Shown here one piece after another: positions 20,763 through 40,240 of a DNA stretch of 64,000 nucleotides. Position 1 is the first letter of the stretch, and each line of letters starts with the position of its first letter. Position numbers and translations under genes: made by a program. The notes beneath the pieces are model-generated. The model searched no databases and had not been told where the DNA came from. It saw only the letters and a list, made by a program, of their open reading frames with translations. The DNA is taken from IMG/VR virus record IMGVR_UViG_3300037258_000590, positions 124,001 to 188,000 of that record, one strand, 5' to 3'.

Positions 20763-20849
20763 GGCGAAACGTTCCCACTGGTCGGAGCTTTCCGGCCACG
20801 CGGGACGTCCACGGGAGGCTGACCACCCCGTGCCGAAGATGCCAGGTCA
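20763..20849 (+). ncRNA. Type II hammerhead ribozyme HH1 (core CCGAAGA)
   Basis: GGC-GAAA; stem III ACGTTCC/GGGACGT; GUC site after 20809; stem I CACGGG/CCCGTG; CCGAAGA-T-GCC; pseudoknot TGACC/GGTCA. Confidence 0.75.
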
Positions 20850-20868
20850 CCAGACAGGAGCGAATGCA

Positions 20869-20982
20869 ATGGACGATAACCGCACAGACAGCCCCGGCCA
20901 AGGTTCCCGCCGGCCCGCGCTGGACACGTACGCCGACAGGGTGGCCGCCGCGGAAACCGTCATAGCCAATAACGGCTGGTAA
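20869..20982 (+). CDS. 37 aa peptide
   Basis: GACAGGAG RBS after HH1. Confidence 0.45.
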   Translation: MDDNRTDSPGQGSRRPALDTYADRVAAAETVIANNGW

Positions 20983-21024
20983 TCGCCGGAAGATGCCGGA
21001 TAACACAGAGCAGGAGCTGTACCA

Positions 21025-21426
21025 ATGATCACCCGCGATGACGCGCTGACCGCCGGGGAATTCCACGAGGAGCACGAGCCGGCCGGCAAGGTCTACGCCT
21101 GGCGGCGTAACGGCCAGACGCAGATCACGATGACCCGCCCGGACGATTTCCGCGTACCGGTCACGTACGGCCTGCGATCTCACCACCAGATCACGCCGGA
21201 CAACGCGCACCGCTTCCACCGCGCGGACCAGTGCCTGACGCTACGCGTCCGCGTAGCCATCCCGGACGGCGGCGGCGAATGGTACGGGATCGTGATCGAA
21301 GAATTGCTGGCAGACAACGCCGGCTACGGCGTCACGCGCGTGCACGTAACCACACGCGGAGCATCGCGCTACCGCGTCGGCTCACAGGTCGACGTCCCGA
21401 CCAAGCGACTGACCTACCTGCAGTAA
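21025..21426 (+). CDS. Phage-type conserved protein
   Basis: WRRNGQTQ...RPDDFRVPVTYGL...ITPDNAHRFH motif; stop TAA abuts HH2. Confidence 0.7.
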   Translation: MITRDDALTAGEFHEEHEPAGKVYAWRRNGQTQITMTRPDDFRVPVTYGLRSHHQITPDNAHRFHRADQCLTLRVRVAIPDGGGEWYGIVIEELLADNAGYGVTRVHVTTRGASRYRVGSQVDVPTKRLTYLQ

Positions 21427-21514
21427 GGCGAAACGTTCCCACTGGTCGGAGGTTGCTCCGGCCGGAGGGGGCGTCCACGGGCGCTGACCTTCCCGTGCCG
21501 ATGATGCCAGGTCA
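21427..21514 (+). ncRNA. Type II hammerhead ribozyme HH2 (core CCGAUGA)
   Basis: Stem III ACGTTCCC/GGGGGCGT; GUC after 21475; stem I CACGGG/CCCGTG; pseudoknot TGACC/GGTCA. Confidence 0.78.
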
Positions 21515-21536
21515 ACCAGATGAGGAGACACCAGCC

Positions 21537-21773
21537 ATGCGCGGATTCATGTTCCCGGCCACGGCCGCCATCCTGCTGCGCGAGCGGACGTGGATGCCCG
21601 ACGTGGCGATCGCCAGCTGGCTCCGCAACTACGGCAAGTCGGGAGAGCGGTTCTTCATCCAGACCACGCGGCCCGGCAACGATCACTACCTGGTCCAGCC
21701 GGCTCCAGGCGGGTTCTGCATCGTGCCGTGCCGGATGGCCCCGGGCACGCCGGCCGGGTACGTCCTGGCCTGA
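21537..21773 (+). CDS. Hypothetical protein
   Basis: GAGGAG RBS; between HH2 and HH3. Confidence 0.6.
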   Translation: MRGFMFPATAAILLRERTWMPDVAIASWLRNYGKSGERFFIQTTRPGNDHYLVQPAPGGFCIVPCRMAPGTPAGYVLA

Positions 21774-21783
21774 CTGTCCGCCA

Positions 21784-21868
21784 GGCGAAACGTTCCGACC
21801 AGTGGGAGATTCCGGCCGGCCGGAACATCCGCGGGCAATGACCTCCCCGCGCTGACGATGCCAGGTCA
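21784..21868 (+). ncRNA. Type II hammerhead ribozyme HH3 (core CUGACGA, AUC site)
   Basis: Stem III GTTCCG/CGGAAC; site after 21829; stem I CGCGGG/CCCGCG; pseudoknot intact; C15.2:A16.2 mismatch. Confidence 0.75.
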
Positions 21869-21888
21869 CGAAAGCTCAGGAGACAGAC

Positions 21889-22410
21889 ATGCCCGCATAC
21901 GACGACAACCCGGCCGTGACCGGGGATTACGTCTGGATCACGGCTGACGGCACGGCCGGGCGGCGTTCCCGCGCGGCGCAGGTCAACGCCGCCAAGCGCG
22001 CCTACGAACGCAGCCACGGCGTGACGCTGACGCTGCTTGCCAGGAGCTACAGCGAAACGTACGGCTTCTTGCACCGGTCAGCGTTCCGGTACGAGATCGG
22101 CCGGCCCGGCCAGTCTTTCACGATCACGTACATGTCCGTGCGATGCGAGGTATGGGACACCGAGCCGGGCACGTACCCGACCATGGCCGCAGCGCAAGCG
22201 CACGTACGGTCAGCGTTCCGAACCCTGTCATCATACTGCCGGGTACGGATCCACGCGCCGGCCGGCCGGCAGAGCCAGGTCGGCTCGCGTACCGGTCTCG
22301 GCCCCTGGTACTTCGAGCCGTGCCCGGCGGGCGGGCGCGTGACCCTGCGCTTCCCGGGATTCCCGCCCGTTACCTGCGCCGGCCCCTCCATCACCGCTAT
22401 CGACGCGTAA
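21889..22410 (+). CDS. Hypothetical protein
   Basis: CAGGAG RBS; stop abuts HH4. Confidence 0.65.
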   Translation: MPAYDDNPAVTGDYVWITADGTAGRRSRAAQVNAAKRAYERSHGVTLTLLARSYSETYGFLHRSAFRYEIGRPGQSFTITYMSVRCEVWDTEPGTYPTMAAAQAHVRSAFRTLSSYCRVRIHAPAGRQSQVGSRTGLGPWYFEPCPAGGRVTLRFPGFPPVTCAGPSITAIDA

Positions 22411-22495
22411 GGCGAAACGTTCCGGCCTGCCGGTTCTTCCCGCCGGCCGGAACGTCTGTGAGAGCTGACCTCCTCACACTGACGATGCCAGGTCA
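22411..22495 (+). ncRNA. Type II hammerhead ribozyme HH4 (core CUGACGA)
   Basis: Stem III ACGTTCCGGCC/GGCCGGAACGT; GUC after 22456; covaried stem I TGTGAG/CTCACA; pseudoknot intact. Confidence 0.88.
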
Positions 22496-22514
22496 CCAGA
22501 GATCAGGAGACACC

Positions 22515-22685
22515 ATGCCGAACGCCACCAGTGACCCGCGCGCCGTCGCCCGGTTCGCGACCATGCGCCGCATCCAGGCGGCTGACGCGCCGGCCCGGTA
22601 CACGCGCAGCCGTCGCCTGGCGGCCATGGGGAAGGGTTACCACGGACCGCTGACCCGCGCGGAGCTAGCCCGTCGAACGGCGTAA
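22515..22685 (+). CDS. 56 aa basic peptide
   Basis: CAGGAG RBS. Confidence 0.55.
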   Translation: MPNATSDPRAVARFATMRRIQAADAPARYTRSRRLAAMGKGYHGPLTRAELARRTA

Positions 22686-22687
22686 CA

Positions 22688-22777
22688 GGCGAAACGTCCC
22701 ACTGATCGGAGGTTACTCCGGCCAGCCGGGACGTCCGCGGGCGCTGAGCACCCCGTACCGAAGAAGATGCCGGATCA
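22688..22777 (+). ncRNA. Hammerhead HH5, degenerate
   Basis: Stem III and GUC (22735) intact; core CCGAAGA followed by extra AGA; weakened stem I and pseudoknot. Confidence 0.5.
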
Positions 22778-22789
22778 CCGGAGGTACAC

Positions 22790-23035
22790 GTGAAAATCCA
22801 GCAAGCCCACTACGACCACATGGTCACGGAGATAAATACAGCTGTAACCAGGATCGGGCCAGATAGGGTGGCCAGCTTCAAGACGCATGTATCGCCGAAA
22901 CGATACCGGTGGGACCTGCTGCGCGCCGCCAACCTCATCCCGTACGTGTGCAGCACGCTCTACCCGTACATGAAGGACGAGCACATAGACACCGCGCTGC
23001 GCCACATCGTAGCCGACCCGTCAAACAAGCTTTAG
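22790..23035 (+). CDS. Phage-type hypothetical protein
   Basis: GGAGG RBS; RYRWDLL...LYPYMKDEHIDTALRHIV. Confidence 0.65.
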   Translation: MKIQQAHYDHMVTEINTAVTRIGPDRVASFKTHVSPKRYRWDLLRAANLIPYVCSTLYPYMKDEHIDTALRHIVADPSNKL

Positions 23036-23058
23036 GCGAAACGTCCGTTCCGCGCCTA

Positions 23059-23134
23059 GGCGAAACGTTCCGATCCTCCCACCGGTCGGAACGTCTACGG
23101 GAGCTGACCTACCCGCACTGAAGATGCCAGGTCA
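23059..23134 (+). ncRNA. Type II hammerhead ribozyme HH6 (core CUGAAGA)
   Basis: Stem III ACGTTCCGA/TCGGAACGT; GUC after 23095; stem I TACGGG/CCCGCA (1 mismatch); pseudoknot intact; a duplicated GGCGAAACGT stub lies at 23035. Confidence 0.82.
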
Positions 23135-23152
23135 CCAGATGAGGAGACGGCT

Positions 23153-23737
23153 ATGAGTGATCGTGAATGGATACCGGCGGCAGACGTCCAGGTCGGCGAC
23201 CAGCTGGCCCACAAGCTGTCGAACACACCGTGGACCTACACGCCGGTTACAGGCTGGTCGGACAAGGTTCTCCACCTCGGGGGCAGCCTCGGGAACGTCA
23301 CGCAGCGCCGGTTCACCGTATCCGGGGCGCCGTGGTGGGTCACCTCAGATGCGGCCAGTCTCTGGCATTCGCTGGACGGGCAAGCACTGGTCCTGAACCT
23401 GGGCAAATACCCCGAGCCTGAACCAATGCCCGAGCCCGAGCCCGAGCCCGAGCCTGTCACGCGCATCGTCCTGGGCGATGACTACTACGGGTTCCGCATG
23501 CCGGTACCGTCCGGCTTCACCGATTACCTGCTGGCCAGCACCGACGATAAATGGGCAGTCCTGGAGTCCATCGGCATCACGCGGCGCGATGACGTCTCCC
23601 CGCTGGCCGCGTGGCGCGACGCGGTAGCCGATGAGACCGGGATTCCCCGCGCGCAGCTAGACCCGGCCCAGGGCGGCGTATTCGACATCGGGTTTACGCC
23701 CGCGTACGTCCGCAAATTCGTGTTCTTCCTGGCCTGA
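23153..23737 (+). CDS. Hypothetical protein with PE-repeat linker
   Basis: GAGGAG RBS; PEPEPMPEPEPEPEP. Confidence 0.65.
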   Translation: MSDREWIPAADVQVGDQLAHKLSNTPWTYTPVTGWSDKVLHLGGSLGNVTQRRFTVSGAPWWVTSDAASLWHSLDGQALVLNLGKYPEPEPMPEPEPEPEPVTRIVLGDDYYGFRMPVPSGFTDYLLASTDDKWAVLESIGITRRDDVSPLAAWRDAVADETGIPRAQLDPAQGGVFDIGFTPAYVRKFVFFLA

Positions 23738-23844
23738 CCCGCAAAGACGTTTCCCGGCCCTTGATCCCCCGAAGCCGGCCGGGACGGCAACCCAGGGGGG
23801 CTAACACCACCCCGCTCAGGATCATGAGACAGGAGACAGCAACC

Positions 23845-24417
23845 ATGATCAAGGTGCTAGTTCAGTCCGTCCCGGACGAAATTCCGGACGGCACGCGCTA
23901 CGAAGTCGCGGCCGGCCTGCCGGGAGACATGACCGGCTGGTTCCAGATCTCACACGCGGGCCTGGTGCTGGCCACGGGCGAGCACAACTACCACGATGAC
24001 AGCGACTTCTACGCAACCGTATGGGACGGCCAGGGGCCGCGCGAGATCACCTACGCCAGCACGCGCGGGTGGACCTATGCCAACAGTGCCACGGCAGACG
24101 CCACGCCGGAGGTACAGGCCGCCTACGGCGCGTGGCGCCAGGCCCGCGCGGGCGAGCGTCAGGCCGCAGCCACGGCAGCGGAGGCGGCCACGCCACGCGC
24201 CGGCAAGACAGTCCGGGTGGTCAGAGGCCGCAAGGTGCCCGTGGGCACTGTGGCGGAAGTCGTCTGGTACGGCGAGGGTAAGCGGTTCAGCCGCCATGCG
24301 CCAGTCCCGATGCGCGTTGGCCTGCTGACCGGCGACGAGCGCGTGTTTACTGATGCGGCCAACGTCGAAGTCGTGACGGCCGATGAGCCAGGCCACCCGA
24401 TGAGGAGACACCTGTGA
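23845..24417 (+). CDS. Phage-type conserved protein
   Basis: GACAGGAG RBS; HNYHDDSDFYATVWD and GKTVRVVRGRKVPVGT motifs. Confidence 0.7.
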   Translation: MIKVLVQSVPDEIPDGTRYEVAAGLPGDMTGWFQISHAGLVLATGEHNYHDDSDFYATVWDGQGPREITYASTRGWTYANSATADATPEVQAAYGAWRQARAGERQAAATAAEAATPRAGKTVRVVRGRKVPVGTVAEVVWYGEGKRFSRHAPVPMRVGLLTGDERVFTDAANVEVVTADEPGHPMRRHL

Positions 24418-24755
24418 AAGTCATCAAAGAGATTGACCACGATCCCCGCACTGTTCGCGAGGTCCGTGTGTTCGTCCGTCAGTACATTTTCGTTGACGGT
24501 GTATCCAGCTACGACGTCCACCTGTCCGAGCTGCGGTACCGCAGCTCAGACGGTGAGCTGACCGACTGCCTGACACTGGACGACAGCTTTAGCCACGTGC
24601 CCGGAGACGCTGAAATAGAAGCCCTGCCGTACATCGCTCCCAGCGTACGGCGCGAGGCCCCCGGGGTGTTCTACATCCTGACCGGGCCTTACCGGAAAGG
24701 CCCGTACGCAAACCGCAGGGAGGCTAACGCGGACATCAGGGCTGGCCGCTGGTAA
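24414..24755 (+). CDS. Hypothetical protein
   Basis: GAGGAG RBS; GTGA overlap. Confidence 0.6.
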   Translation: MKVIKEIDHDPRTVREVRVFVRQYIFVDGVSSYDVHLSELRYRSSDGELTDCLTLDDSFSHVPGDAEIEALPYIAPSVRREAPGVFYILTGPYRKGPYANRREANADIRAGRW

Positions 24756-24779
24756 CCCCCTGCGCACTACCACTAGCCA

Positions 24780-24855
24780 GGCGAAACATTTCGATTCTCC
24801 CACTGGTCGGAACGTCCGCGAGAGCTAACCTGCCCGCGCCGATGATGCCAGGTCA
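24780..24855 (+). ncRNA. Type II hammerhead ribozyme HH7 (core CCGAUGA)
   Basis: Stem III ACATTTCGA/TCGGAACGT (1 mismatch); GUC after 24816; stem I CGCGAG/CCCGCG; loop TAACC vs tail GGTCA. Confidence 0.68.
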
Positions 24856-24876
24856 CGAGATAAGGAGACAGGTTCT

Positions 24877-25169
24877 GTGATCTACCAGGTCGGCCGGTTC
24901 ACCCGCGACCAGTTCACATCGGACGCCGCTTTCCACGCGGCGATCAGGTGCCAGATGATCAGTTGCCCCGAGCTGTACCCCGAGCTGGCAGAGGCCGCCG
25001 CCGAGACCGAGCGGCTGGCACCCAAGATCCGCAAGACCGGAAAGAAGACATCATGAACCCCTACCTGGTCCGCGACGAGAACGGCGAGCCGGTCATGCGG
25101 TTGGTCGAACGTGACCGCTACGGCCGGTTCTGCCGACCTTACTACGCCTACATCTGGAAGACATCATGA
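24877..25169 (+). CDS. Two coupled small ORFs (24877-25056 and 25053-25169)
   Basis: AAGGAG RBS; ATGA overlaps; both end KTS. Confidence 0.5.
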
Positions 25170-26473
25170 GCGTCAGCCTTAGCGCGGCAGCATCGGTCCG
25201 GCAGCACGCGGAGCGCCTGGAGAAGGATATCCGCAACCAGGCCAAAACCGTAGCCTACGACCTGACCATGTGCGCCCAAGCCGTGTTACGCGTGCGATCA
25301 GCCGGTCAAGTAACCCAGGAAGAAGAGAAGGCTATGGAAGCTAGCAAACTGAGCGCCGCCTACACCAGCGGCCCGCCGCACCCGCTCGCCGCCCGGCCGC
25401 GCGAGTACACCGGCCCGATGGCCCCGGACCACAAGCTGGGCGGCATCTACGCCATCATGGACCGGCACGGCATGCTGCCGGACGGACCGGGCGGGATCGC
25501 CTGCCTGCGGTGCGCGAAGCCGCTCAACGCTGACGGCGGCCACCCCGCTGAGCTGTACGCCGGGACATACAACGGCCTGTGCTACCCGTGCACCTCGGCG
25601 CCGGCATTCGTGGCCCGCACGGCCGTCCTGGACGGCGCCCGGGAGGTGTCCTGGCCGCCGCACTGCCCGTCGTGGCGCCGGGACCGCGAGAAGCACATTG
25701 CCTATGAAGGCTGCCCGGCCTGCGACGGCCTAGGCATCACCCTGGGCACCCGGACCTACAGCAGCGGCGGCCGGTCATGCGAGCCGTGCCGGACCCGGTT
25801 CTGCGGCCACCCGGTACGCGCGGCGGCCAGCCGGTGGAACGAGCAGGCCATGCGGTCTTGCCAGGCCGCCTTCGACCAGGCCATCGACCAGGCCGCGGGC
25901 GTGCCAGCACGATGCACCAGGAAACGTCGCACCGAGCTGCGTGAGGCGTTCATCGGCCTCGCCGGGAACGGCCGCTCGCCGGAATGCGAAGCGCTGCGCC
26001 TGGCTCACCTGGCTGGCTACTGGCGCATCCGCGCGCTTATCCGCGCGCACTTCGAGGCGCGAGGCTGGAACCAGTGGTCAGATACCAGCAACGATGAGGC
26101 GTGGGCCAGGGCGTACTGCACCTGGCGCGGACTGGATTATGACGCGCTGGCCGCCGGCGAGCCCCAGCCCGGACCGCCTGAGCCCCAGCCCGAACCGCCT
26201 GGGCCGGAAAACCCGCAAGCCGGGCGGATCGCCGTGCTACGGGCCCTGACCTTCGAGCGGGCCGAGGAGTGGTGGCGTACCGGCCGGATCAGTACCGACG
26301 AGTGGGAGGCGTTCGGTTACGCCTGGCGGCGCGGCGCCGTCCGCTTCTCCGGCGTCGGCGCCGGTTTCGAGCACCCCGTCTCGCAAAAGGTGCGCGAGCT
26401 GGGCAACGCCATCATGGGCGGCAATGCACCAGGCACCTGCCCGTGCCCGGCGGGCGAGAACTGCACCCTGTGA
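25166..26473 (+). CDS. Multi-CxxC hypothetical protein
   Basis: CLRC, CYPC, CPAC, CEPC motifs; ATGA overlap. Confidence 0.65.
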   Translation: MSVSLSAAASVRQHAERLEKDIRNQAKTVAYDLTMCAQAVLRVRSAGQVTQEEEKAMEASKLSAAYTSGPPHPLAARPREYTGPMAPDHKLGGIYAIMDRHGMLPDGPGGIACLRCAKPLNADGGHPAELYAGTYNGLCYPCTSAPAFVARTAVLDGAREVSWPPHCPSWRRDREKHIAYEGCPACDGLGITLGTRTYSSGGRSCEPCRTRFCGHPVRAAASRWNEQAMRSCQAAFDQAIDQAAGVPARCTRKRRTELREAFIGLAGNGRSPECEALRLAHLAGYWRIRALIRAHFEARGWNQWSDTSNDEAWARAYCTWRGLDYDALAAGEPQPGPPEPQPEPPGPENPQAGRIAVLRALTFERAEEWWRTGRISTDEWEAFGYAWRRGAVRFSGVGAGFEHPVSQKVRELGNAIMGGNAPGTCPCPAGENCTL

Positions 26474-26514
26474 AGCGACCCAGCATCACCCCGTAACTAC
26501 CGAAAGGCCCTGAA

Positions 26515-26763
26515 ATGTCTGACCGGTCTGAGCTGGCTACTCCATCCGGGTACGCCGGCGTTGAATACACGGACGGTAAGGTGCACGCCATCGACCTGGA
26601 CACGCTGCACGGTGAGACGCCGGCGTACCCGCGCGGGATGCCGTTGTGGCGCGAACCCGTGGTGTGCGGGGCCGCTAGTGGCGTGTCCAGCGATGAGGGC
26701 GGTCCTGCCGCGTTGCACCGCAAGACGCTCACCTGCTGGATGTGCGTCTCCATCCTGGCCTGA
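26515..26763 (+). CDS. Hypothetical protein
   Basis: Array orientation; LTCWMC. Confidence 0.55.
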   Translation: MSDRSELATPSGYAGVEYTDGKVHAIDLDTLHGETPAYPRGMPLWREPVVCGAASGVSSDEGGPAALHRKTLTCWMCVSILA

Positions 26764-32945: not shown

Positions 32946-32946
32946 A

Positions 32947-34722: not shown

Positions 34723-34723
34723 A

Positions 34724-34813
34724 GGTGAAACGTCCCGCTGGCCGGAGCTTCCGGCCGGCGGGGCGTCCGCGAGAGCCAGCCGCCTCGCCGACCTGAACCG
34801 CTCGGAGGATGCC
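34724..34813 (+). ncRNA. Hammerhead-like HH12 with an insertion in the core
   Basis: GGT-GAAA; stem III ACGTCCCGC/GCGGGGCGT; GUC after 34767; CCGA-[16 nt]-GA-T-GCC. Confidence 0.45.
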
Positions 34814-34832
34814 GCAAAGGAAGGACTGACCT

Positions 34833-35102
34833 GTGAGCACAGACCACGAATTCAGCCCGTGGAAGTTCAACACCGAGTACGCCCCCGTCCGGTGGGCGCG
34901 ACGATGCAGGACCTGCCACCTCGGCCTGGGTCACGCCGAGGTCAGCCCGTCGCCTCTGCCGCCAGCGTCGGCGCTCGCCGAGATGCCGGAGTGGGAGCGC
35001 GCAGCGGTAGAGGGCCTTTCAGCGGCGTACTGGGTGACCGCCGCCGCAAGCAGCAGCGGGATCCGGGAACGGTCCGGCTTCCCGGACTGGCTCAACAAGT
35101 AA
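34833..35102 (+). CDS. Hypothetical protein with CxxC
   Basis: AAGGAAGG RBS. Confidence 0.55.
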   Translation: MSTDHEFSPWKFNTEYAPVRWARRCRTCHLGLGHAEVSPSPLPPASALAEMPEWERAAVEGLSAAYWVTAAASSSGIRERSGFPDWLNK

Positions 35103-35116
35103 AGGAGCACCCGACC

Positions 35117-36286
35117 ATGCACAACACCGGACTAGAAAGCGCAGAGATCCCTGACCCGATAGAGGAAGCGCGCAGGCTGGACGGGCGCGCCTCCCGCCAG
35201 GAAGCGCTGGCGCTAGAGCAGGCCCTGCGCCGCGAAGGCTGGCAGCACACGTTCGCTGCCTACCGCGGCGAAAATTACGACCGGATGTCCGGCCCGCTCT
35301 CAACATCGGTGTCCGGAGCCGGGTACTGGGACCACCCGGACCACCCCGGCGTCGTGATCAGGGCCGGGGAGGGCATCAACTACCGGGCGGGGACCTCGTG
35401 GGGGGAAGTCTGCATCCTGGCCGGCGAGCGGCTGGCCTCGGTGCAGGCCGAGATCGCGACGGAGCGGGAACGCCGCGCCGCCCTGGCCGCCGAAGACGCG
35501 CGCCTCGCCGCCCTTCCCTCCGTCGCCATCCCCGGTGCCAGCGACACCGATATAGCCGCCCTGTACCGTGCCGTCGGCGAAACGCTCGCCGGCCTCAATG
35601 ACGCGTGCTCAGAGGCGGGCCGCGCGGACCAGCTGTACGGCAACCGGGAAGTATCCCTGCAATGGGATGCCACCAAGGAAGCCGTCTACGCCGCCCGGCA
35701 AGCGGCGGACACGCTCCATCAGCGGCTCATGGTGGCGCAGATCCACCGCGAATCCCTCGCCCGGTCCGAACTCCAGTCCCTGGCTCCTTACATAGAGGCT
35801 GGTGACACCGAGCTGCTGGAAGCGAGCGGCGTGCCCGAAGGCTACGCGGATGAGCTGGCCGCCGAGGCCGAGCACGCCGCCCGCACGATGGCCCCGCCCG
35901 TGCCGGACGTGACGCGAAACGCGGGCTACACCGTGCGCGCGGTCATGCCTGGCCACCCGGCCGGGAACGACCTGCTGGCCAGCTGGTGGGTAGCAGCCGA
36001 AGACATAGCGGACGGCGGATGGGTGACCTGGGAAGCCTACGCACTGAACGGCGAGCAGGCAGGACAGCTGAGTTACAACGCCGGCCACTACTTCGACGGC
36101 ACGGATCAGGCCGTGAACCGGCGCGGCGCGCTGGCGAACCTGGCTGTCCGGGCCGGCACGATGCCGGAAATGGCCCACCTCATCGCGGCTGAGGTCATGC
36201 GGTACGCCGGGAACATACTCCCGCCGTCCGTTAAAGCCGAGGACCAGCGGATGGCGTCCCGCCTGCGCAAGTGGGCTTCGCGCTGA
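35117..36286 (+). CDS. Mosaic multi-domain hypothetical protein
   Basis: AAGGAG RBS; C-terminus paralogous to 28992-29561. Confidence 0.7.
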   Translation: MHNTGLESAEIPDPIEEARRLDGRASRQEALALEQALRREGWQHTFAAYRGENYDRMSGPLSTSVSGAGYWDHPDHPGVVIRAGEGINYRAGTSWGEVCILAGERLASVQAEIATERERRAALAAEDARLAALPSVAIPGASDTDIAALYRAVGETLAGLNDACSEAGRADQLYGNREVSLQWDATKEAVYAARQAADTLHQRLMVAQIHRESLARSELQSLAPYIEAGDTELLEASGVPEGYADELAAEAEHAARTMAPPVPDVTRNAGYTVRAVMPGHPAGNDLLASWWVAAEDIADGGWVTWEAYALNGEQAGQLSYNAGHYFDGTDQAVNRRGALANLAVRAGTMPEMAHLIAAEVMRYAGNILPPSVKAEDQRMASRLRKWASR

Positions 36287-36318
36287 GCGCCGGAACTACT
36301 GACAGACAGGAGACGGTC

Positions 36319-37056
36319 ATGACCGATAACACGATCACCCAGCCCGCGCCCGCACCGCGCGATGGAGACGCAGCTGAAATCCGCGAGCTGCTAGCTGAAC
36401 TGTCCGGCGCCCTGGATGGCGACTTCGGTGACTGGCCGCAAGGTCGCAGCCTGGTGCGCCAGGTGACCGCGTACCTGGACGGCGAGGCGAGCCGCCTGCC
36501 TGCGCGGGCTGGTTCCCCGGCCCTGCGGGTGATCGCGGCCATCCCGCAGGGCACGGGCCGGGAGATCATCGCGGTGGTGGAGCAGCCGGGCCCGTATCCG
36601 GGCGGCCAGCGTTACGGGACGGTCCGCGGGTACCGGAACGACCTGGATGACGGGACGGTGCGGTGGTCGGCGGAGGCCGGGCATTACGACTACCTGGACC
36701 TAACCCGGGCGCTGCGCGGCATGTGCAGCCGGGCGGGAATAAAGGTGGTGTGGCCGGATCCGGCAGCACTGACGCCGGACATGGTGCTGGCCCAGCGGAT
36801 GGCGGAAACGATGTGGGCGATCGCGACCAGCACGAACCACGCCATCGCGGTGTACAGCACGCCGGTCTACCTGCACATGGAACAGGCGTTCCTGAGCGCG
36901 GTACAGGTGGCCTACAGCTGCTCGCGACTAACCGCGCGGCGGGTGCGGGATCTGCTGGCCGAGTACGGGCCGGATGAGTCTCTGCAGGGCACGTCCGGTA
37001 GCGGCGTGTGGAGCTACGTCCGGTTCGCGCAGGACCGGGCCAACCGGCGCTACTGA
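36319..37056 (+). CDS. Hypothetical protein
   Basis: GACAGGAG RBS. Confidence 0.65.
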   Translation: MTDNTITQPAPAPRDGDAAEIRELLAELSGALDGDFGDWPQGRSLVRQVTAYLDGEASRLPARAGSPALRVIAAIPQGTGREIIAVVEQPGPYPGGQRYGTVRGYRNDLDDGTVRWSAEAGHYDYLDLTRALRGMCSRAGIKVVWPDPAALTPDMVLAQRMAETMWAIATSTNHAIAVYSTPVYLHMEQAFLSAVQVAYSCSRLTARRVRDLLAEYGPDESLQGTSGSGVWSYVRFAQDRANRRY

Positions 37057-37087
37057 CAACAGAACATCACCGGAGAGCAGGCTAGCA

Positions 37088-37621
37088 GTGAAATCAGTCC
37101 CGATGAAAACCAGTGAGCTAGGCCATTTCATATGCGCAGCGCATGGCGGCTGCCTACACCAGGATCGCACCATCTACTCCAGCGGAGTCTGGGTGCAGTA
37201 CACCCTCGGGGGGATAACGCGCCACGGCAGTAGCGCCCATCAAGACTGTTTCGAGGCATGGGCACTCCGGGAAGCCGCACCAGTTGATCAGATGCCGCAG
37301 AGCGCGCCCGCAGAACCCGGCGTCAAGAACGAGCCGTGGCCGATAGCTAACGCCATCGCCTGCCTAGAAGAGGTGCGCGACCGCGAGAGCGGCAGCAACG
37401 CTGATCCCGCGCGTGCCGAGACAGTACGGCTGACCATCGATTACGCCATCGAGGTGGTCAAGGCCCTCAACACGATGCGCGAGCCGCAGCCGCCGGACCC
37501 GGCCGAGGAGGCACGCAAGGCAGTCCGCAAGTTCGCAGGCGAGCTGGGCCAGGCGATCGAGAACCTGGGGCTGGCCATGCAGGACATCGCTGACGGGAAC
37601 ATCCCGGAACGCGACGGCTAA
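37088..37621 (+). CDS. Hypothetical protein
   Basis: GGAGAG RBS; start uncertain. Confidence 0.5.
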   Translation: MKSVPMKTSELGHFICAAHGGCLHQDRTIYSSGVWVQYTLGGITRHGSSAHQDCFEAWALREAAPVDQMPQSAPAEPGVKNEPWPIANAIACLEEVRDRESGSNADPARAETVRLTIDYAIEVVKALNTMREPQPPDPAEEARKAVRKFAGELGQAIENLGLAMQDIADGNIPERDG

Positions 37622-37640
37622 CCGGAGACAGGAGACCCAG

Positions 37641-38015
37641 TTGAGCAACGCCGACGTCGGCGCGATCACCCCGCAAGACGTAGAAGCCTTTACCTCCGGC
37701 GCCTGCGGGCTGCTGGCTGAGGCGATCCATGAGACAACCGGCTGGGAACCGGCGTGTTTCTGGAACGGGTTCAGCGCATGCGGGCATGCGTTCGTGCGAA
37801 TGCCGGATGGTTTGTACCTGGATATCCGCGGAGTGCATACGCACCGGGAGATGCTGGACAGCCACTGGGGGCAGCCAGGAAAACGGCACGGCCGCCGCGG
37901 GGTCACCACGGCACACTACGCCAGCCCGCTTGCGCTTGGTGACCAGGCGGCCCTGACAGCGCGCGCCCGGCAGCTCGTGCCCGCCGTACTAGCCCTGGCA
38001 GCGCAGCCCGGCTGA
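37641..38015 (+). CDS. Putative Cys-His-Asp (papain/transglutaminase-like) small protein
   Basis: FTSGACGLLAEAIHETTGW...GHAFVRMPDGLYLDIRG. Confidence 0.45.
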   Translation: MSNADVGAITPQDVEAFTSGACGLLAEAIHETTGWEPACFWNGFSACGHAFVRMPDGLYLDIRGVHTHREMLDSHWGQPGKRHGRRGVTTAHYASPLALGDQAALTARARQLVPAVLALAAQPG

Positions 38016-38023
38016 CCAGTTTC

Positions 38024-38102
38024 CGGCGAAACGTCCCGCCGGCCGGAACTTCCGGATAGCGGGGCGTCCGCGGGGGATAGCCGCCTCGCGCTGATGATGC
38101 CG
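38024..38102 (+). ncRNA. Type II hammerhead ribozyme HH13 (CUGAUGA, 4-bp stem II, no pseudoknot)
   Basis: CGGC/GCCG stem II; stem III ACGTCCCGC/GCGGGGCGT; GUC after 38068; stem I CGCGGGG/CCTCGCG. Confidence 0.78.
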
Positions 38103-38347
38103 AACCGTTTTTTATGACAGGAGTGCTGATCGTGATCGGTATTTGCATCGGGTTTACGCGAATCGGTGAGGCGGCGACATGGCGGGAGGCCATGGCCGCT
38201 TGCACGACCTGGGCGAGTTCATGAAGTCGGCGGCCGGTTTCGAACAGCGGGGCTGGCACGGGTTCGCCGCGGACTCGGCGGTCAGCGGGGTTCTGGTCCG
38301 GCTGATCGATGACGAGACGGTGCAGACCGGTTTCGCGGTGAGCTGAG

Positions 38348-38659
38348 ATGACCACCGCGAAGACAAGCATGGTGCACTGCGGCGTGCCCCGGTGGGATGC
38401 CCGCGTGACAGACGCTGCCGGGAAGCCGGTGCCCGCATGGTACCCGCCATGGTCGCGCAGGTGGTTCATCATCCGCCGGGCGGCCGGAGAAGCCGGGGTG
38501 ACACTGGAAACCAGGATCCCGGGATGGCCCAGCGGAATAGCAAAGCACGATAACCAGGCTGCGGCCGAGATGGCGGCACGCGAAACCTGGCGCGGATACG
38601 CGGCAGAGGTGACCAGGATCACCGGCCGGGAACAGGAGAGCGAACCATGGACGAGCTGA
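38348..38659 (+). CDS. Hypothetical protein
   Basis: Array orientation. Confidence 0.55.
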   Translation: MTTAKTSMVHCGVPRWDARVTDAAGKPVPAWYPPWSRRWFIIRRAAGEAGVTLETRIPGWPSGIAKHDNQAAAEMAARETWRGYAAEVTRITGREQESEPWTS

Positions 38660-38841
38660 TGGCCCCGGATGATGTCGTGACCCGGATAACCGAAGCAGCC
38701 GCTGATGCGGACGCGCTGGCGATCATGCGCGGCGTTCCGCACGCAATGCTGCTGGCCGTGGCGGACCTGCTGCACATCGACCCGTACGGCCACCACGACC
38801 CGTGGCTGCGCAAGGCCATCGTGACCGAAGCCAGGACCTGA
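38647..38841 (+). CDS. Hypothetical protein
   Basis: ACAGGAG RBS. Confidence 0.6.
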   Translation: MDELMAPDDVVTRITEAAADADALAIMRGVPHAMLLAVADLLHIDPYGHHDPWLRKAIVTEART

Positions 38842-38848
38842 TGAGGAG

Positions 38849-39523
38849 ATGAACATTCCCGTGACCAGCGAGAAAACCGCTCTCGGCAGCTACACCGTAT
38901 GCGACCCCCCGTTCGACACGTATGGCAGCACCACCGTACCGCTGCGCACGCCGCACGGACCGGTAACGCTGCACGTCACCGACGACAGCCATGTATACGC
39001 CGACTCCAGCTACCGGGCGCGCGAGTATGACAGCAGCCCGAGCCTGAACGCGACAGTGGAGTGCTTTACCTGGAAAGGCGCCGATGTGATCGGCTCTGCG
39101 AACTTCTACGCTGACACCGGCTGGATGCCTAAATGCGACGAGCACTTCTCCGGGCGCGGACGAAATATCACCGCGAAGATGACCGCGGAAATCATCGCGC
39201 ACTGGTCAGCGGTGATAACGCGGTACATGACAGAGAACCCGCTGATCCCGGTGCACGCCGGATTCCGGGCTCAAGTGCTGGCCATGGGCAAGAAAAGCGC
39301 GGAGATCCGCAAGACCACGGAGGTACTGGCCGCATTGCGGGCCGATCACGCCAGGCTGCGCCGCGCGGTACGCCAGGCGCTTGCCGCCGAGCGCACTCTG
39401 CGCGAACCAGGCGGGATGAACGAGCCGCGCCCGTACGCCGATTACCAGAGCCACTACGCCAGCGGTTACGTCGTAGAGCTGGAGCAAGATGCAGCTCGCA
39501 AGGAGCACGACGCGAAATCGTGA
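38849..39523 (+). CDS. Hypothetical protein
   Basis: GAGGAG RBS. Confidence 0.65.
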   Translation: MNIPVTSEKTALGSYTVCDPPFDTYGSTTVPLRTPHGPVTLHVTDDSHVYADSSYRAREYDSSPSLNATVECFTWKGADVIGSANFYADTGWMPKCDEHFSGRGRNITAKMTAEIIAHWSAVITRYMTENPLIPVHAGFRAQVLAMGKKSAEIRKTTEVLAALRADHARLRRAVRQALAAERTLREPGGMNEPRPYADYQSHYASGYVVELEQDAARKEHDAKS

Positions 39524-39563
39524 CCGGAGCCAAGACCCGCCGTACTGAGAACAGGAGACAGGC

Positions 39564-40178
39564 ATGCCCGGAATGACCCCCGCCGAACAACGTGACAAGC
39601 AGTACCGGGAGCTGGCGGCGACCATCGCGAGCCAGGCCCAGGCCATCGCGGACGGCACGCTGACCGGACCGTGTTACGCCCATGCGCGATTGATCCTGCG
39701 CAACGCTGAGCAGCTTGCAGCCGAGACGCCGGATGACCGGAGCGGCATGCCCGCCGCGGAACCCGGACCGGGTACCGGCACGCTAACCGAACGACGCAAG
39801 GCCGACCGCGCGCTGATGGCCGGCAGCGTAGCCGAGCTGGCCCGCCAGTACGGACTGCGCGCCGTGGTAACAGGCGAGCAGCACGGATCGCGGGAAACGT
39901 CTGTCAACCTGTCCGGCCCGCACGAACTGAAACTAACTGTGCACTTCCGCGGCGATTCTGTGCAACCAGATACCCACGTACTGATCTGGTACAGGGTGGA
40001 CCACCCGGTACCAGGCTCAGGTATCCAGTTGAACCCGGCGGTTTTCCGCAACGTCGATGCGCATCACGGCGCGGATGCCGCCGATGTCGTGCACGGATTC
40101 CAGGCGCTGTGCGAACTGCTGAAGCAGCGGTTCGCGGCCATCGCGGACGGGCGTGCGTTCATCATCCCTGACCGCTGA
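39564..40178 (+). CDS. Mosaic hypothetical protein
   Basis: ACAGGAG RBS. Confidence 0.65.
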   Translation: MPGMTPAEQRDKQYRELAATIASQAQAIADGTLTGPCYAHARLILRNAEQLAAETPDDRSGMPAAEPGPGTGTLTERRKADRALMAGSVAELARQYGLRAVVTGEQHGSRETSVNLSGPHELKLTVHFRGDSVQPDTHVLIWYRVDHPVPGSGIQLNPAVFRNVDAHHGADAADVVHGFQALCELLKQRFAAIADGRAFIIPDR

Positions 40179-40184
40179 CGGATG

Positions 40185-40240
40185 CGGCGAAACGTCCCGC
40201 CGGCCGGAACTTCCGGATAACGGGGCGTCCCTGAGGGCCG
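40185..40240 (+). repeat. 5' half of a hammerhead (HH14), truncated
   Basis: Nearly identical to the first 46 nt of HH13; no CUGANGA downstream. Confidence 0.65.

What the first reader, a model, noticed from the sequence alone, without database searches (positions are those of the whole stretch)
20763..40240. Operon punctuated by an array of type II hammerhead ribozymes
Seen: the intergenic repeat parses as stem IIb (GGC), GAAA, stem III hairpin, GUC/AUC, stem I hairpin, C(U/C)GANGA, U, stem IIa (GCC), tail GGUCA pairing with loop-I UGACC. Apparently intact copies start at 20763, 21427, 21784, 22411, 23059, 24780, 30065, 30367 and 38024; damaged ones at 22688, 27780, 29561, 32947, 34724 and 40185. 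Stem I covaries (CACGGG/CCCGTG, CGCGGG/CCCGCG, TGTGAG/CTCACA). Most copies start 0-25 nt after a stop codon and end about 12-20 nt before the next start. Established: this is the type II hammerhead topology with a loop I-tail pseudoknot, and phage hammerheads near start codons are known. Inference: one long transcript of accessory genes self-cleaves into gene-sized RNAs with 5'-OH and 2',3'-cyclic-phosphate ends. I am not aware of an array this dense in an actinomycete conjugative element.
Basis: partly seen in the sequence, partly recalled or inferred. Interest (0 to 1): 0.96.

Follow-up and report, generated by a model that had tools for sequence, protein, structure and literature searches.

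The report
Hammerhead ribozymes punctuating a long operon
The intergenic repeats are genuine type II hammerhead self-cleaving ribozymes set between the genes of one long operon of a large actinobacterial phage or plasmid, an arrangement first described in 2011; here it is large but partly decayed, while sister elements from soil carry up to 36 intact copies in 25 kb.

Summary
Fourteen same-strand copies of an ~85-nt repeat lie between 20762 and 40269, and there are at least eight shorter relics out to about 48.5 kb. Each copy sits between a stop codon and the next Shine-Dalgarno sequence and start codon. The copies have the type II hammerhead order, catalytic core and loop I-tail pseudoknot.

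By published criteria only six window copies are canonical, with cuts predicted after 21829, 22456, 23095, 30111, 30414 and 38068. Three carry a U4C core change and five are broken.

Across 91 copies (window plus related soil-metagenome contigs) the stems and the pseudoknot covary strongly. One 24.7-kb contig has 36 of 36 canonical copies, about one per 690 nt.

Most likely the ribozymes cut a long transcript into single-gene or few-gene mRNAs. Each piece would end in the stem III hairpin and begin with the stem I hairpin plus a standard leader. Cleavage itself is untested.

Clustered hammerheads flanking small phage genes were described in 2011, so this is a new, unusually large member of a known kind. 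The "conjugative element" label is unproven: the source is a 210-kb IMG/VR contig with mixed phage-like and plasmid-like genes.

The parts
16841..63272 (+). Co-directional array of mostly small genes of unknown function (the presumed long transcription unit that carries the ribozymes)
   Evidence: Codon-position GC analysis puts essentially all credible genes from 16.8 kb onward on the + strand. No sigma-70 consensus promoter and no + strand terminator-like site occur in 15-35 kb, apart from one inside the 29561 relic. The leader motif GACAGGAG occurs 28 times, all on the + strand, from 19.5 to 62.3 kb, against 2.4 expected. That this is a single transcript is inferred.
20762..20851 (+). Hammerhead II copy, U4C core variant (CCGAAGA); stems and pseudoknot intact; cut would fall after 20809
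   Evidence: CM 93 bits; parse; the MFE fold gives the three-way junction. It fails the canonical-core criterion at U4.
20979..21003 (+). Relic: 3' end of a hammerhead (GAAGAUGCCGGAUAAC) followed by the SD of gene 21025-21426
   Evidence: Read directly from the sequence.
21426..21516 (+). Hammerhead II copy, U4C core variant (CCGAUGA); cut would fall after 21475
   Evidence: CM 93 bits, Rfam 25.7 bits; parse. The stop codon of the upstream gene supplies model position 1.
21783..21870 (+). Hammerhead II copy, canonical core, with one C15.2 x A16.2 mismatch in stem III; cut after 21829
   Evidence: CM 99.9 bits, Rfam 23.4 bits; parse.
22410..22497 (+). Hammerhead II copy, fully canonical; cut after 22456
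   Evidence: CM 102 bits, Rfam 28.2 bits; no mismatch in stems I or III or in the pseudoknot.
22687..22779 (+). Broken copy: core lost (AAGAAGA or CCGAAGA plus an AGA insertion), stem I disturbed, pseudoknot weakened
   Evidence: CM 67 bits; alignment; parse.
23035..23050 (+). Relic: duplicated 5' start (GGCGAAACGU) 24 nt upstream of the next copy
23058..23136 (+). Hammerhead II copy, canonical core, short stem III, one A1.2 x C2.2 mismatch in stem I; cut after 23095
   Evidence: CM 87.8 bits, Rfam 27.2 bits; parse; the MFE fold gives the three-way junction.
24779..24857 (+). Probably dead copy: U4C plus mismatches in stems I and III and in the pseudoknot; nominal cut after 24816
   Evidence: CM 81 bits; the MFE fold does not give the hammerhead structure.
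26765..26795 (+). Relic of stem III in the 26763-26818 intergenic gap
   Evidence: nhmmer E 0.23, weak on its own; read in context.
27779..27866 (+). Broken copy: core GAGAUGA (C3 and U4 lost), two stem III mismatches; tail and pseudoknot kept
   Evidence: CM 71 bits.
28934..28969 (+). Relic: 5' half of a copy followed directly by the leader and SD
   Evidence: nhmmer E 0.014, CM 14 bits.
29561..29600 (+). Relic: 5' half (stem II strand, GAAA, part of stem III), then leader and SD
30064..30152 (+). Hammerhead II copy, canonical (stem II has one G-U pair); cut after 30111
   Evidence: CM 99 bits, Rfam 34.6 bits; MFE three-way junction.
30366..30455 (+). Hammerhead II copy, canonical (one distal stem I mismatch); cut after 30414
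   Evidence: CM 96.7 bits, Rfam 31.8 bits.
32946..33024 (+). Broken copy: GAAA and the CUGANGA core are lost
   Evidence: CM 33 bits; alignment.
34723..34801 (+). Broken copy (second subfamily): stem III intact, 3' core disrupted by an insertion
   Evidence: CM 46.5 bits.
38024..38109 (+). Hammerhead II copy, canonical core, 4-bp stem II, no obvious loop I-tail pseudoknot, followed by a U6 run; cut after 38068
   Evidence: The only copy above the Rfam gathering score (39.6 vs 37); CM 80 bits. It occupies the same junction as the intact copy L025:4595.
40185..40269 (+). Broken copy: 5' half intact, 3' half replaced. It sits at the junction that holds an intact hammerhead (L025:5928) in a related contig
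   Evidence: CM 38 bits.
45693..45720 (+). Relic: 5' half (AGCGAAAC...) plus leader and SD. The related contig has an intact hammerhead after the homologous gene (L025:3132)
47300..47392 (+). Full-length but heavily degenerate copy (core lost; tail CCAGGUCAC and leader kept)
   Evidence: nhmmer E 0.005, CM 14 bits.
48496..48526 (+). Relic: 5' half plus leader and SD
   Evidence: weak.
15400..16840 (.). Divergent intergenic region upstream of the + strand array, the presumed promoter and regulatory region. It holds four 21-nt inverted-repeat motifs (15706-15834) and a perfect 35-bp x 4.8 tandem repeat (16185-16352). A PadR-like gene (14790-15350) lies on the - strand
   Evidence: The promoter role is inferred and not shown.

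Best explanation
The repeats are type II hammerhead ribozymes, each fused to a standard ribosome-binding leader and placed between the cistrons of one long + strand transcript of a large actinobacterial mobile element (phage or plasmid).

How it most likely works:
1. Each unit folds as it is transcribed. Stems I and III are hairpins. A 3-bp stem II closes the junction. A 5-bp pseudoknot between loop I (UGACC) and the 3' tail (GGUCA) aligns stems I and II.
2. The RNA then cuts itself after C17 of GUC.
3. Only the 3-bp stem II holds the two products together, so they separate at once.
4. The upstream mRNA keeps its stop codon and ends in the long G+C-rich stem III hairpin with a 2',3'-cyclic phosphate.
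5. The downstream mRNA starts exactly at the first base pair of stem I with a 5'-OH. It keeps the stem I/tail pseudoknot and carries AGGAG and the start codon about 60-65 nt from its new 5' end.

The result is a set of single-gene or few-gene mRNAs. They have uniform, hairpin-capped ends whose translation and decay no longer depend on the neighbouring genes, like a natural insulator.

In this window the system is partly decayed. About six sites are predicted to cut well (after 21829, 22456, 23095, 30111, 30414, 38068). Two U4C sites may cut slowly or not at all (20809, 21475). The remaining sites are dead copies or deletion relics.

Shown: identity, topology, covariation and placement. Inferred: the single transcript, cleavage in vivo, and the stabilising or insulating effect.
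For: Identity:
- Rfam Hammerhead_II hits lie only at these repeats and only on the + strand.
- Ten copies in all pass Rfam's gathering score: one in the window and nine in relatives.

Structure (91 copies):
- 94.6% of cells are paired, against 29-40% when the 3' partners are slid.
- 133 cells have changes on both sides, against 32.9 +/- 4.5 in shuffles (0 of 500 shuffles reach the observed value).
- A15.1-U16.1 is invariant in 91 of 91 copies.
- The pseudoknot pair switches between A-U (67 copies) and G-C (21 copies).

Selection: canonical core plus intact stems is found in 36 of 36 copies of contig Ga0210383_10001119, 7 of 7 and 4 of 4 in two others, and 72 of 78 relatives overall.

Placement:
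- The upstream stop codon overlaps model positions 1-2 in 40 of 91 copies, and the start codon lies 14-23 nt after the model in 80 of 91.
- The flanked genes are unrelated to each other, so the repeats are not by-products of gene duplication.
- All copies are in the sense orientation of the genes.

Precedent:
- Clustered hammerheads flanking single phage genes cleave in vitro in about 2-kb native transcripts, and in E. coli.
- Type II hammerheads are active in vivo in Desulfovibrio vulgaris.
Against: - No cleavage data exist for any copy of this subfamily, and the element is uncultured.
- In the window itself, more than half of the sites are broken or reduced to relics. The ribozymes are therefore dispensable in this lineage.
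- More distant relatives with homologous genes have no hammerheads at all.
- All window copies carry an extra U between A9 and G10.1, and three carry U4C. By the strict published criteria any core change disqualifies a hit. From memory, an extra residue at this position is tolerated in some viroid and satellite hammerheads.
- From memory, 5'-OH ends can attract RNase J, as with the glmS ribozyme. Cleavage could therefore destabilise rather than stabilise the downstream mRNA.
- A single long transcript is inferred only from gene orientation and from consensus scans that are poorly suited to actinobacteria.
Confidence: 0.72

Rival explanations
1. Mostly relics. The repeats are hammerheads by descent, but in this element the array is no longer functional. 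It is a decaying remnant of a ribozyme expansion that was neutral or selfish, and gene expression here does not depend on cleavage.
For: - Only 6 of 13 aligned window copies are canonical, against 72 of 78 in relatives.
- At least eight deletion relics keep only the leader and SD.
- At two junctions the window copy is dead or a relic where a sister contig has an intact copy: 40185 against L025:5928, and 45693 against L025:3132.
- More distant relatives lack hammerheads entirely.
Against: - Four copies are still flawless and two nearly so, which is unexpected if selection had been absent for long.
- In sister contigs the 36 of 36 intact cores, together with compensatory changes, show purifying selection on the RNA structure.
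- Intact copies would cleave whether or not they are needed.
Confidence: 0.15
2. Destabilising or regulated cleavage. The ribozymes act as built-in decay triggers or switches, by analogy with glmS. For example, a ribosome terminating on the stop codon that overlaps the 5' edge of the ribozyme would delay folding, so cleavage would report on translation of the upstream gene.
For: - The stop codon overlaps the first 1-2 nt of the ribozyme in 40 of 91 copies and lies within 1 nt in 47 of 91. A terminating ribosome would therefore cover stem II and the 5' strand of stem III (inference).
- Perreault et al. raise regulated cleavage for phage hammerheads.
Against: - Both products carry terminal hairpins with no single-stranded overhang. 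From memory, such ends protect mRNAs from end-dependent RNases.
- No ligand-binding or variable sensor domain is present. The variable part of stem III is a plain hairpin of any sequence.
Confidence: 0.1
3. Circular or re-joined RNAs. Fragments excised between two hammerheads carry 5'-OH and 2',3'-cyclic-phosphate ends. An RtcB-type ligase, or the ribozyme's reverse reaction, could circularise them, as in retrozymes and viroid-like RNAs.
For: - Every excised piece would carry compatible ends and the two halves of a hammerhead (sequence logic).
- Tandem hammerheads give circular RNAs in eukaryotic retrozymes.
- An RNA-end-processing enzyme, a CCA-adding or poly(A)-polymerase-type enzyme with an HD domain, is encoded just right of the window.
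Against: - Perreault et al. looked for spliced or circular products of prophage clusters and found none.
- In the type II layout only a 3-bp stem II joins the two halves, which favours release over religation.
- No RtcB or other RNA ligase was found in the parts examined.
Confidence: 0.04
4. DNA-level role. The repeats are primarily recombination sites or cassette boundaries (integron-attC-like or MITE-like) that shuffle genes, and the hammerhead resemblance is secondary.
For: - Homologous genes occur in a different order in related contigs, and the aligned blocks begin and end at the repeats.
- Copies at orthologous junctions are no more alike than random pairs, with ranks 3-76 of 78. This suggests exchange or conversion among copies.
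Against: - The invariant positions are exactly the hammerhead catalytic nucleotides, and the variable positions change in a pair-preserving way, including the pseudoknot. That is selection on an RNA fold.
- Orientation is always sense to the genes.
- The repeat ends (AGGCGAAAC ... GCCAGGUCA) do not match the attC inverse-core pattern.
- No integrase was found among the proteins scanned.
- Recombination between 80-nt repeats is an expected side effect rather than a rival function.
Confidence: 0.04

Closest known systems
Clustered type II (and I/III) hammerheads flanking genes in prophages (Perreault et al. 2011, PMC3088659; restated in de la Pena 2017, PMC6155905)
   Same: - Same ribozyme class and topology, with the same loop I-tail pseudoknot.
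- Same placement, flanking single small genes or short gene blocks of unknown function in phage-like DNA.
- Same proposed role, processing long transcripts into gene-length mRNAs.
   Different: - Scale. The published text describes pairs and triples tested on about 2-kb fragments. Here there are 14 copies plus relics over more than 25 kb, and sister contigs carry 36 in 24.7 kb, 24 in 15.8 kb and 13 in 8.6 kb.
- Every unit is fused to one standard SD leader.
- The host is probably Actinomycetota, which that paper does not mention (0 occurrences).
- Most copies fall below Rfam's gathering score.
Type II hammerheads of Desulfovibrio vulgaris shown active in vivo by cyPhyRNA-seq (PMC8782182)
   Same: Bacterial type II hammerheads that yield 5'-OH and 2',3'-cyclic-phosphate fragments in cells.
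   Different: Three isolated copies at separate loci, not an operon-wide array.
Synthetic ribozyme insulators such as RiboJ (Lou et al. 2012, from memory) and Csy4-processed synthetic operons
   Same: A self-cleaving ribozyme followed by a hairpin and an RBS gives each gene a defined 5' end that does not depend on the upstream sequence. This is the function proposed here.
   Different: Those are engineered parts built from a type III satellite-RNA hammerhead. The array here is natural, is type II, and its effect on expression is untested.
tRNA punctuation of mitochondrial polycistronic transcripts (from memory)
   Same: Structured RNAs between nearly all cistrons mark the sites where a long precursor is cut into single mRNAs.
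   Different: There the cutting is done in trans by RNase P and RNase Z. Here the punctuation marks would cut themselves.
Integron gene-cassette arrays with attC sites
   Same: Co-oriented, unrelated small genes separated by 60-140-nt imperfect palindromic repeats, with gene order differing between relatives.
   Different: - The conserved nucleotides here are the hammerhead core, not the attC R/L boxes.
- No integrase was found.
- The covariation includes a pseudoknot, which has no role in attC.
Retrozymes and viroid-like circular RNAs with tandem hammerheads (PMC4918200, PMC7761336)
   Same: Successive hammerheads excise a defined RNA segment.
   Different: - Those are type III or type I ribozymes on non-coding RNAs of 0.2-1 kb that circularise and replicate.
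- Here the excised pieces are ordinary protein-coding mRNAs, and nothing indicates that they form circles.

Membership tests
Hammerhead ribozyme, type II (Rfam RF02276; criteria of Perreault et al. 2011) | Catalytic core C3 U4 G5 A6 N7 G8 A9 / G12 A13 A14 / A15.1-U16.1 / H17 | tested here: met
   - Met by 6 of 14 window copies: 21783, 22410, 23058, 30064, 30366 and 38024.
- U4C in 20762, 21426 and 24779.
- Core lost in 22687, 27779, 32946, 34723 and 40185.
- Met by 74 of 78 copies in relatives.
- All window copies, and 66 of 91 copies overall, have an extra U between A9 and G10.1.
Hammerhead ribozyme, type II (Rfam RF02276; criteria of Perreault et al. 2011) | Three helices around the core, with stems I and III closed by loops and stem II open (type II order: II-3' strand, GAAA, III, H17, I, CUGANGA, II-5' strand) | tested here: met
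   - The order can be read directly.
- Every helix shows compensatory changes: 15 of 22 pairs have changes on both sides, and 94.6% of cells are paired against 29-40% in slid controls.
- The MFE folds of six copies give the three-way junction.
Hammerhead ribozyme, type II (Rfam RF02276; criteria of Perreault et al. 2011) | No mispair next to the core (10.1-11.1, 1.1-2.1, 15.1-16.1) and no multiple mispairs in short stems | tested here: met
   - Met by the six canonical copies and by the two cleaner U4C copies.
- Not met by 22687, 24779 and 27779.
Hammerhead ribozyme, type II (Rfam RF02276; criteria of Perreault et al. 2011) | Pseudoknot of four or more pairs between loop I and the tail 3' of stem II (typical, not obligatory) | tested here: met
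   - UGACC with GGUCA in 59 of 91 copies.
- A second subfamily has UGGCC with GGCCR. The middle pair switches between A-U (67) and G-C (21).
- 10 of 13 window copies keep at least 4 pairs.
- Copy 38024 has no obvious pseudoknot but has a 4-bp stem II.
Hammerhead ribozyme, type II (Rfam RF02276; criteria of Perreault et al. 2011) | Score at or above the Rfam gathering threshold (37 bits) | tested here: inconclusive
   - Window: one copy passes (38024, 39.6 bits). Six more score 23.4-34.6 bits.
- Relatives: nine copies pass. These are one each in L048, L061 and L027, and three each in L056 and L025.
- The long stem III insertions and the extra U cost score.
Hammerhead ribozyme, type II (Rfam RF02276; criteria of Perreault et al. 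2011) | Mg2+-dependent site-specific self-cleavage giving 5'-OH and 2',3'-cyclic phosphate | not testable with these tools
   This needs transcription and cleavage assays or end-specific RNA-seq.
Clustered phage/prophage hammerhead arrangement (Perreault et al. 2011, Fig. 3) | Several hammerheads, sense to the genes, flanking single genes or short gene blocks whose identities are not conserved | tested here: met
   Spacing is 277-4357 nt in the window, with a median of 594 nt in relatives.
Clustered phage/prophage hammerhead arrangement (Perreault et al. 2011, Fig. 3) | Phage or prophage context | tested here: inconclusive
   Phage-leaning:
- IMG/VR lists the 210-kb source contig as viral.
- Relatives of one array gene lie on contigs with an endolysin and tail-fibre-like genes, and its fold matches uncharacterised proteins of large phages.
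- A tRNA nucleotidyltransferase lies next to the window.

Plasmid-leaning:
- The FtsK/TraB-like protein has its best hits on Streptomyces plasmids.
- The DUF4192 protein is found only on Actinomycetota plasmids.
- There is a weak DUF2637 match.

No capsid, tail or relaxase gene was seen in the parts examined.
Integron cassette array | attC sites with inverse core sites (RYYYAAC ... GTTRRRY) and an IntI integrase nearby | tested here: not met
   - The repeat ends read AGGCGAAAC ... GCCAGGUCA.
- No integrase domain appears among the roughly 60 proteins scanned against Pfam, PHROGs or NCBIfam.
- Not every ORF was scanned.

The most novel reading that the evidence does not exclude
A lineage of large actinobacterial phages or plasmids in soil may use 'hammerhead punctuation' as its general way of expressing accessory genes. 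Virtually every cistron of a 25-35-kb operon would be released as its own mRNA by a ribozyme fused to a standard leader. The same ~85-nt ribozyme-plus-leader unit would also serve as the portable junction at which genes are swapped between elements. That would make each gene a plug-and-play cassette at both the RNA and the DNA level. The family also offers a natural experiment on what bacterial hammerheads are for: lineages with fully intact arrays, a decaying array (this window), and no hammerheads at all.
Probability: 0.35. Interest if true: 0.75.

Novelty: new member of a known kind. Interest (0 to 1): 0.55.

Why it matters
A 2019 review states that the biological role of bacterial hammerheads remains largely unknown. 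This family could help in three ways.

1. It gives the question an unusually strong handle. Dozens of ribozymes sit in one operon, always in the same stop-ribozyme-SD-start frame. Sister lineages differ in whether the array is intact (36 of 36), decaying (this window) or absent. Comparing mRNA boundaries, half-lives and protein output across these states would test directly whether the ribozymes insulate, stabilise or destabilise cistrons. Active and core-mutant constructs in a laboratory Streptomyces, Mycolicibacterium smegmatis or E. coli strain would give the same test.

2. It is a natural counterpart of engineered ribozyme insulators.

3. It exposes an annotation blind spot. Rfam's gathering threshold catches only about one copy in ten, so arrays like this are probably under-reported.

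Tried and rejected
1. Close DNA relatives among deposited phages and plasmids: none by megablast with the 20-kb region.
2. The exact ribozyme pattern in 185,579 species-representative genomes. Of 19 hits, 18 are chance matches (negative with the CM). One is real, on a 1.1-kb contig binned to Deinococcus.
3. IMG/VR. Only the window's own contig carries the first subfamily, and none carries the GGCC-pseudoknot subfamily. A protein-based search found no second viral contig.
4. Gene duplication as the source of the repeats: rejected, because the flanked proteins are unrelated.
5. Other ribozyme or RNA families in the window: none. The remaining Rfam hits at E up to 10 are weak chance matches or palindromes.
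6. Minus-strand CM hits are only the palindromic stem III.
7. Function of the array genes. Pfam, PHROGs and NCBIfam give almost nothing. One confident AlphaFold model (gene 23761-24417, pLDDT 89) matches only uncharacterised phage proteins and has no PDB fold match with E <= 0.001.
8. Linkage of each ribozyme to its upstream or downstream gene: no signal.
9. Phage versus plasmid. Walking about 9 kb beyond the right edge and 3.6 kb beyond the left edge found no hallmark genes, so this was left unresolved.
10. tRNA genes: none in the window.
11. Sigma-70 promoter and terminator scans were uninformative.

Full report

Yes. All fifteen listed repeats are present on the + strand.

Rfam's Hammerhead_II model hits seven of them and nothing else of that class in the 64 kb. 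Copy 38024 scores 39.6 bits, above the gathering score of 37. Copies 30064, 30366, 22410, 23058, 21426 and 21783 score 23-35 bits.

I built a covariance model (R1) from the nine 'intact' copies, with the hammerhead II structure written explicitly, and ran it with filters off. It finds 14 significant copies (33-102 bits). All are on the + strand between 20762 and 40269, with none elsewhere. The minus-strand hits are only the palindromic stem III.

Within the window alone the proposed pairs already show 15 pairs with changes on both sides, against 6.5 +/- 1.6 in shuffles. Pairing is 87%, against 25-42% when the 3' partners are slid.

**2. Anatomy**

Each unit reads, 5' to 3':
- the stem II strand GGC, which often begins inside the upstream stop codon;
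- G12 A13 A14;
- A15.1, a stem III hairpin, U16.1;
- C17, the cleavage site;
- a 6-7-bp stem I hairpin whose loop holds UGACC;
- C3 (U/C)4 G5 A6 N7 G8 A9;
- an extra U;
- GCC, which closes stem II;
- A, then GGUCA, which pairs with the loop.

About 8-12 nt further on come AGGAG and the start codon.

Stem III is 7-9 bp in the short form and up to about 18 pairs in the long form.

In the window the upstream stop codon lies 0-25 nt before 13 of 15 copies. The next start lies 15-20 nt after the model end. The genes between copies are not paralogues; only one pair shares a domain. The repeats are therefore independent intergenic modules.

**3. How many copies are intact?**

The published criteria require an unchanged core, no mispair next to the core, and no multiple mispairs in short stems. 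Against these:
- Four copies are flawless or nearly so: 22410, 30064, 30366 and 38024.
- Two have a single internal stem mismatch: 21783 and 23058.
- Two have C at U4 but are otherwise intact: 20762 and 21426.
- One has U4C plus three further defects: 24779.
- Five have lost the core: 22687, 27779, 32946, 34723 and 40185.

A profile search and direct reading reveal further relics in + strand intergenic gaps:
- a 3' end at about 20979;
- a duplicated 5' start at 23035;
- 5' halves at 28934, 29561, 45693 and 48496;
- a stem III fragment at 26765;
- a full-length but ruined copy at 47300;
- possibly others near 19040 and 54037.

The typical relic keeps the 5' half and jumps straight to the leader and SD. 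The ancestral array therefore extended well beyond the coordinates given, and it is decaying in this lineage.

The leader GACAGGAG occurs 28 times, all on the + strand, from 19.5 to 62.3 kb, against 2.4 expected.

**4. Relatives**

The window is positions 124001-188000 of IMG/VR contig IMGVR_UViG_3300037258_000590, which is 210,383 bp long.

An exact-pattern scan of species-representative genomes gave only one real hit, on a 1.1-kb contig binned to Deinococcus.

The metagenome scan, followed by the covariance model, found the same subfamily in much denser same-strand arrays on soil contigs:

| Contig | Copies | Length |
|---|---|---|
| Ga0210383_10001119 | 36 | 24,717 bp |
| Ga0307478_10005789 | 13 | 8,637 bp |
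| Ga0307478_10013583 | 10 | 5,642 bp |
| Ga0307478_10000967 | 7 | 13.3 kb read |
| Smaller contigs | 2-4 each | |

A sister contig from another sample has 24 copies in 15.8 kb. Median spacing in the relatives is 594 nt.

Core and stems are canonical in 36 of 36, 7 of 7, 4 of 4, 10 of 13 and 7 of 10 copies of the larger contigs, and in 72 of 78 copies overall. The window has 6 of 13.

Over all 91 copies:
- 94.6% of cells pair, against 29-40% in slid controls.
- 133 cells carry changes on both sides, against 32.9 +/- 4.5 in shuffles.
- A15.1-U16.1 never varies.
- The middle pseudoknot pair switches between A-U (67 copies) and G-C (21 copies).

The alignment was fitted to the model, which favours the structure somewhat. 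Even so, whole-stem swaps in stem III and the two pseudoknot subfamilies are visible by eye.

The second subfamily (loop UGGCC with tail GGCCR) lacks the extra U after A9.

Placement is stereotyped across the family. The stop codon overlaps model positions 1-2 in 40 of 91 copies, and the start codon lies 14-23 nt after the model in 80 of 91.

Rfam at its gathering score recognises only ten of these copies: one in the window and nine in relatives. Routine annotation would therefore miss such arrays.

**5. Gene content and shuffling**

Many array genes of the window have homologues of 50-80% amino-acid identity in the relatives, but in a different order. For example, contig L057 has the order w21425, w23817, w22435, w19859, w31092. 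The aligned DNA blocks start and stop at the ribozyme units.

Copies at orthologous junctions are no more alike than random pairs, with ranks 3-76 of 78. This suggests exchange or conversion among copies.

In a sister contig, intact hammerheads sit at the junctions where the window has the dead copy 40185 and the relic at 45693.

More distant relatives of one array protein (48-63% identity) lie in similar arrays of small genes without any hammerhead. The ribozyme expansion is therefore specific to one sub-lineage.

**6. What is the replicon?**

Unresolved.

Phage-leaning evidence:
- The IMG/VR label.
- A relative of array gene 23761-24417 lies on a 111-kb contig with an endolysin and tail-fibre-like genes. 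Another lies on a 518-kb contig of many small genes that also encodes PARP, radical SAM and a split NAD-dependent ligase.
- A confident model of that protein (pLDDT 89) matches only uncharacterised proteins of uncultured Caudovirales, Burkholderia phage BcepSauron, Caulobacter phage CcrBL9 and Mycobacterium phage FF47.
- A tRNA nucleotidyltransferase with an HD domain lies just right of the window.

Plasmid-leaning evidence:
- An 881-aa FtsK/TraB-like protein has its translocase part closest to Streptomyces plasmid genes.
- There is a weak DUF2637 match.
- A DUF4192 protein has homologues only on Actinomycetota plasmids, in 20 records, and none in the phage collection.

Both sets of evidence point to an actinobacterial host. 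G+C content is 63-75%.

**7. Mechanism**

Shown: ribozyme identity, topology, covariation, sense orientation and the fixed stop-ribozyme-SD-start frame.

Inferred:
- One long + strand transcript starts in the divergent region at 15.4-16.8 kb.
- Each canonical unit cleaves after C17.
- The products part at once, because only the 3-bp stem II joins them.
- The upstream mRNA ends in the stem III hairpin with a cyclic phosphate, about 45 nt after its stop codon.
- The downstream mRNA begins flush with stem I, keeps the stem I/tail pseudoknot, and presents a standard leader.

This is what a ribozyme insulator does in synthetic biology. It also fits the 2011 proposal that phage transcripts are processed into gene-length mRNAs, for which in vitro and E. 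coli cleavage were shown on other clusters.

In this window the predicted pieces are 21830-22456, 22457-23095, 23096-30111, 30112-30414 and 30415-38068, plus the two flanks. If U4C copies are active there would be further cuts at 20809 and 21475.

**8. Rivals**

- Neutral or selfish relics. This is partly true for the window.
- Destabilising or translation-coupled cleavage.
- Circularisation of the excised pieces. An earlier study looked for this in other clusters and did not find it.
- A primarily DNA-level cassette role. Pair-preserving variation and the conserved catalytic nucleotides argue against it.

**9. Novelty and score**

[quoted passage not shown] This is not a new kind of system.

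I found no paper in the searchable library that describes arrays of this size, this subfamily, or an actinobacterial case. That search covers only open-access papers and preprints.

The verdict is a new and unusually large member of a known kind. In this window it is caught in a state of decay. Its value is as a natural comparative system for a function that remains open.

Noticed in passing
window 15706-15834, 15978-16028, 16185-16352: The divergent intergenic region upstream of the + strand gene array holds three repeat sets. There are four copies of a 21-nt motif containing an inverted repeat (TTAGC...GCTAA), a 13-nt x 3.8 repeat, and a perfect 35-bp x 4.8 tandem repeat. A PadR-like gene (14790-15350) lies next to it on the - strand. 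These look like operators and/or iterons.
   Followed up: partly
window 6353-8998 (- strand): This is an 881-aa FtsK/TraB-like protein. Residues ~450-760 resemble Streptomyces plasmid translocases. Residues ~267-468 match pieces of terminases and DnaB from unrelated phages and bacteria at 33-42% identity. That pattern is expected of an intein-like insertion, but Pfam reports no Hint domain.
   Followed up: partly
window 55596-57668 (+): This 690-aa protein matches a phage 'DNA topoisomerase' family at both ends. It is interrupted by an intein with Hint and LAGLIDADG homing-endonuclease domains.
   Followed up: no
L066 10600-12024 (contig 187,489-188,913; starts ~510 nt inside the window's right end and runs ~910 nt beyond it): This 474-aa protein has a poly(A)-polymerase/CCA-adding head domain plus an HD domain and matches the phage tRNA nucleotidyltransferase family. 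From memory, the HD domain of the E. coli CCA-adding enzyme has 2',3'-cyclic phosphodiesterase activity. That could act on ribozyme-generated ends, but no link has been shown.
   Followed up: partly
window 19567-62286, + strand: The octamer GACAGGAG occurs 28 times, all on the + strand and mostly just upstream of start codons, against 2.4 expected on both strands. It is a shared translation-initiation leader used by genes with and without a hammerhead.
   Followed up: partly
window 38102-38125: The only copy above the Rfam threshold (38024) is followed by a run of six U before the SD. It lacks the loop I-tail pseudoknot and has a 4-bp stem II instead. Whether the U run causes any termination is unknown.
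   Followed up: no
window 17177-17320, inside ORF 16841-18058: A 15/33/48-nt tandem repeat lies inside the first large gene of the + strand array. It would encode a repetitive, low-complexity segment. The protein has homologues at the head of related arrays (L040, L056, L029) but no family match.
   Followed up: no
window 24514-24561: A 47-nt near-perfect palindrome lies inside gene 24414-24755. Rfam picks it up on both strands as weak chance 'mir-143' matches.
   Followed up: no
L048, L061, L056, L025, L027 (related metagenome contigs): Rfam's Hammerhead_II model at its gathering score detects 1 of 14, 1 of 24, 3 of 4, 3 of 7 and 1 of 10 copies in these loci. Standard annotation would therefore badly under-count such arrays.
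   Followed up: yes
L068 (JGI 3300045049, 111-kb contig) 5073-7562: A phage-like contig carrying a homologue of array gene 23761-24417 also encodes a TROVE (Ro60-like) protein next to a tRNA-like gene. Together with the CCA-adding enzyme near the window, this hints at an RNA-maintenance theme in these elements.
   Followed up: no
L057:226, L057:1077, L027:1124, L027:5535 and window 20762, 21426, 24779: The U4C core variant (CCGAUGA or CCGAAGA) recurs in seven copies on three contigs, with otherwise intact stems in most. It may be a tolerated or slow-cleaving natural variant rather than simple damage.
   Followed up: partly
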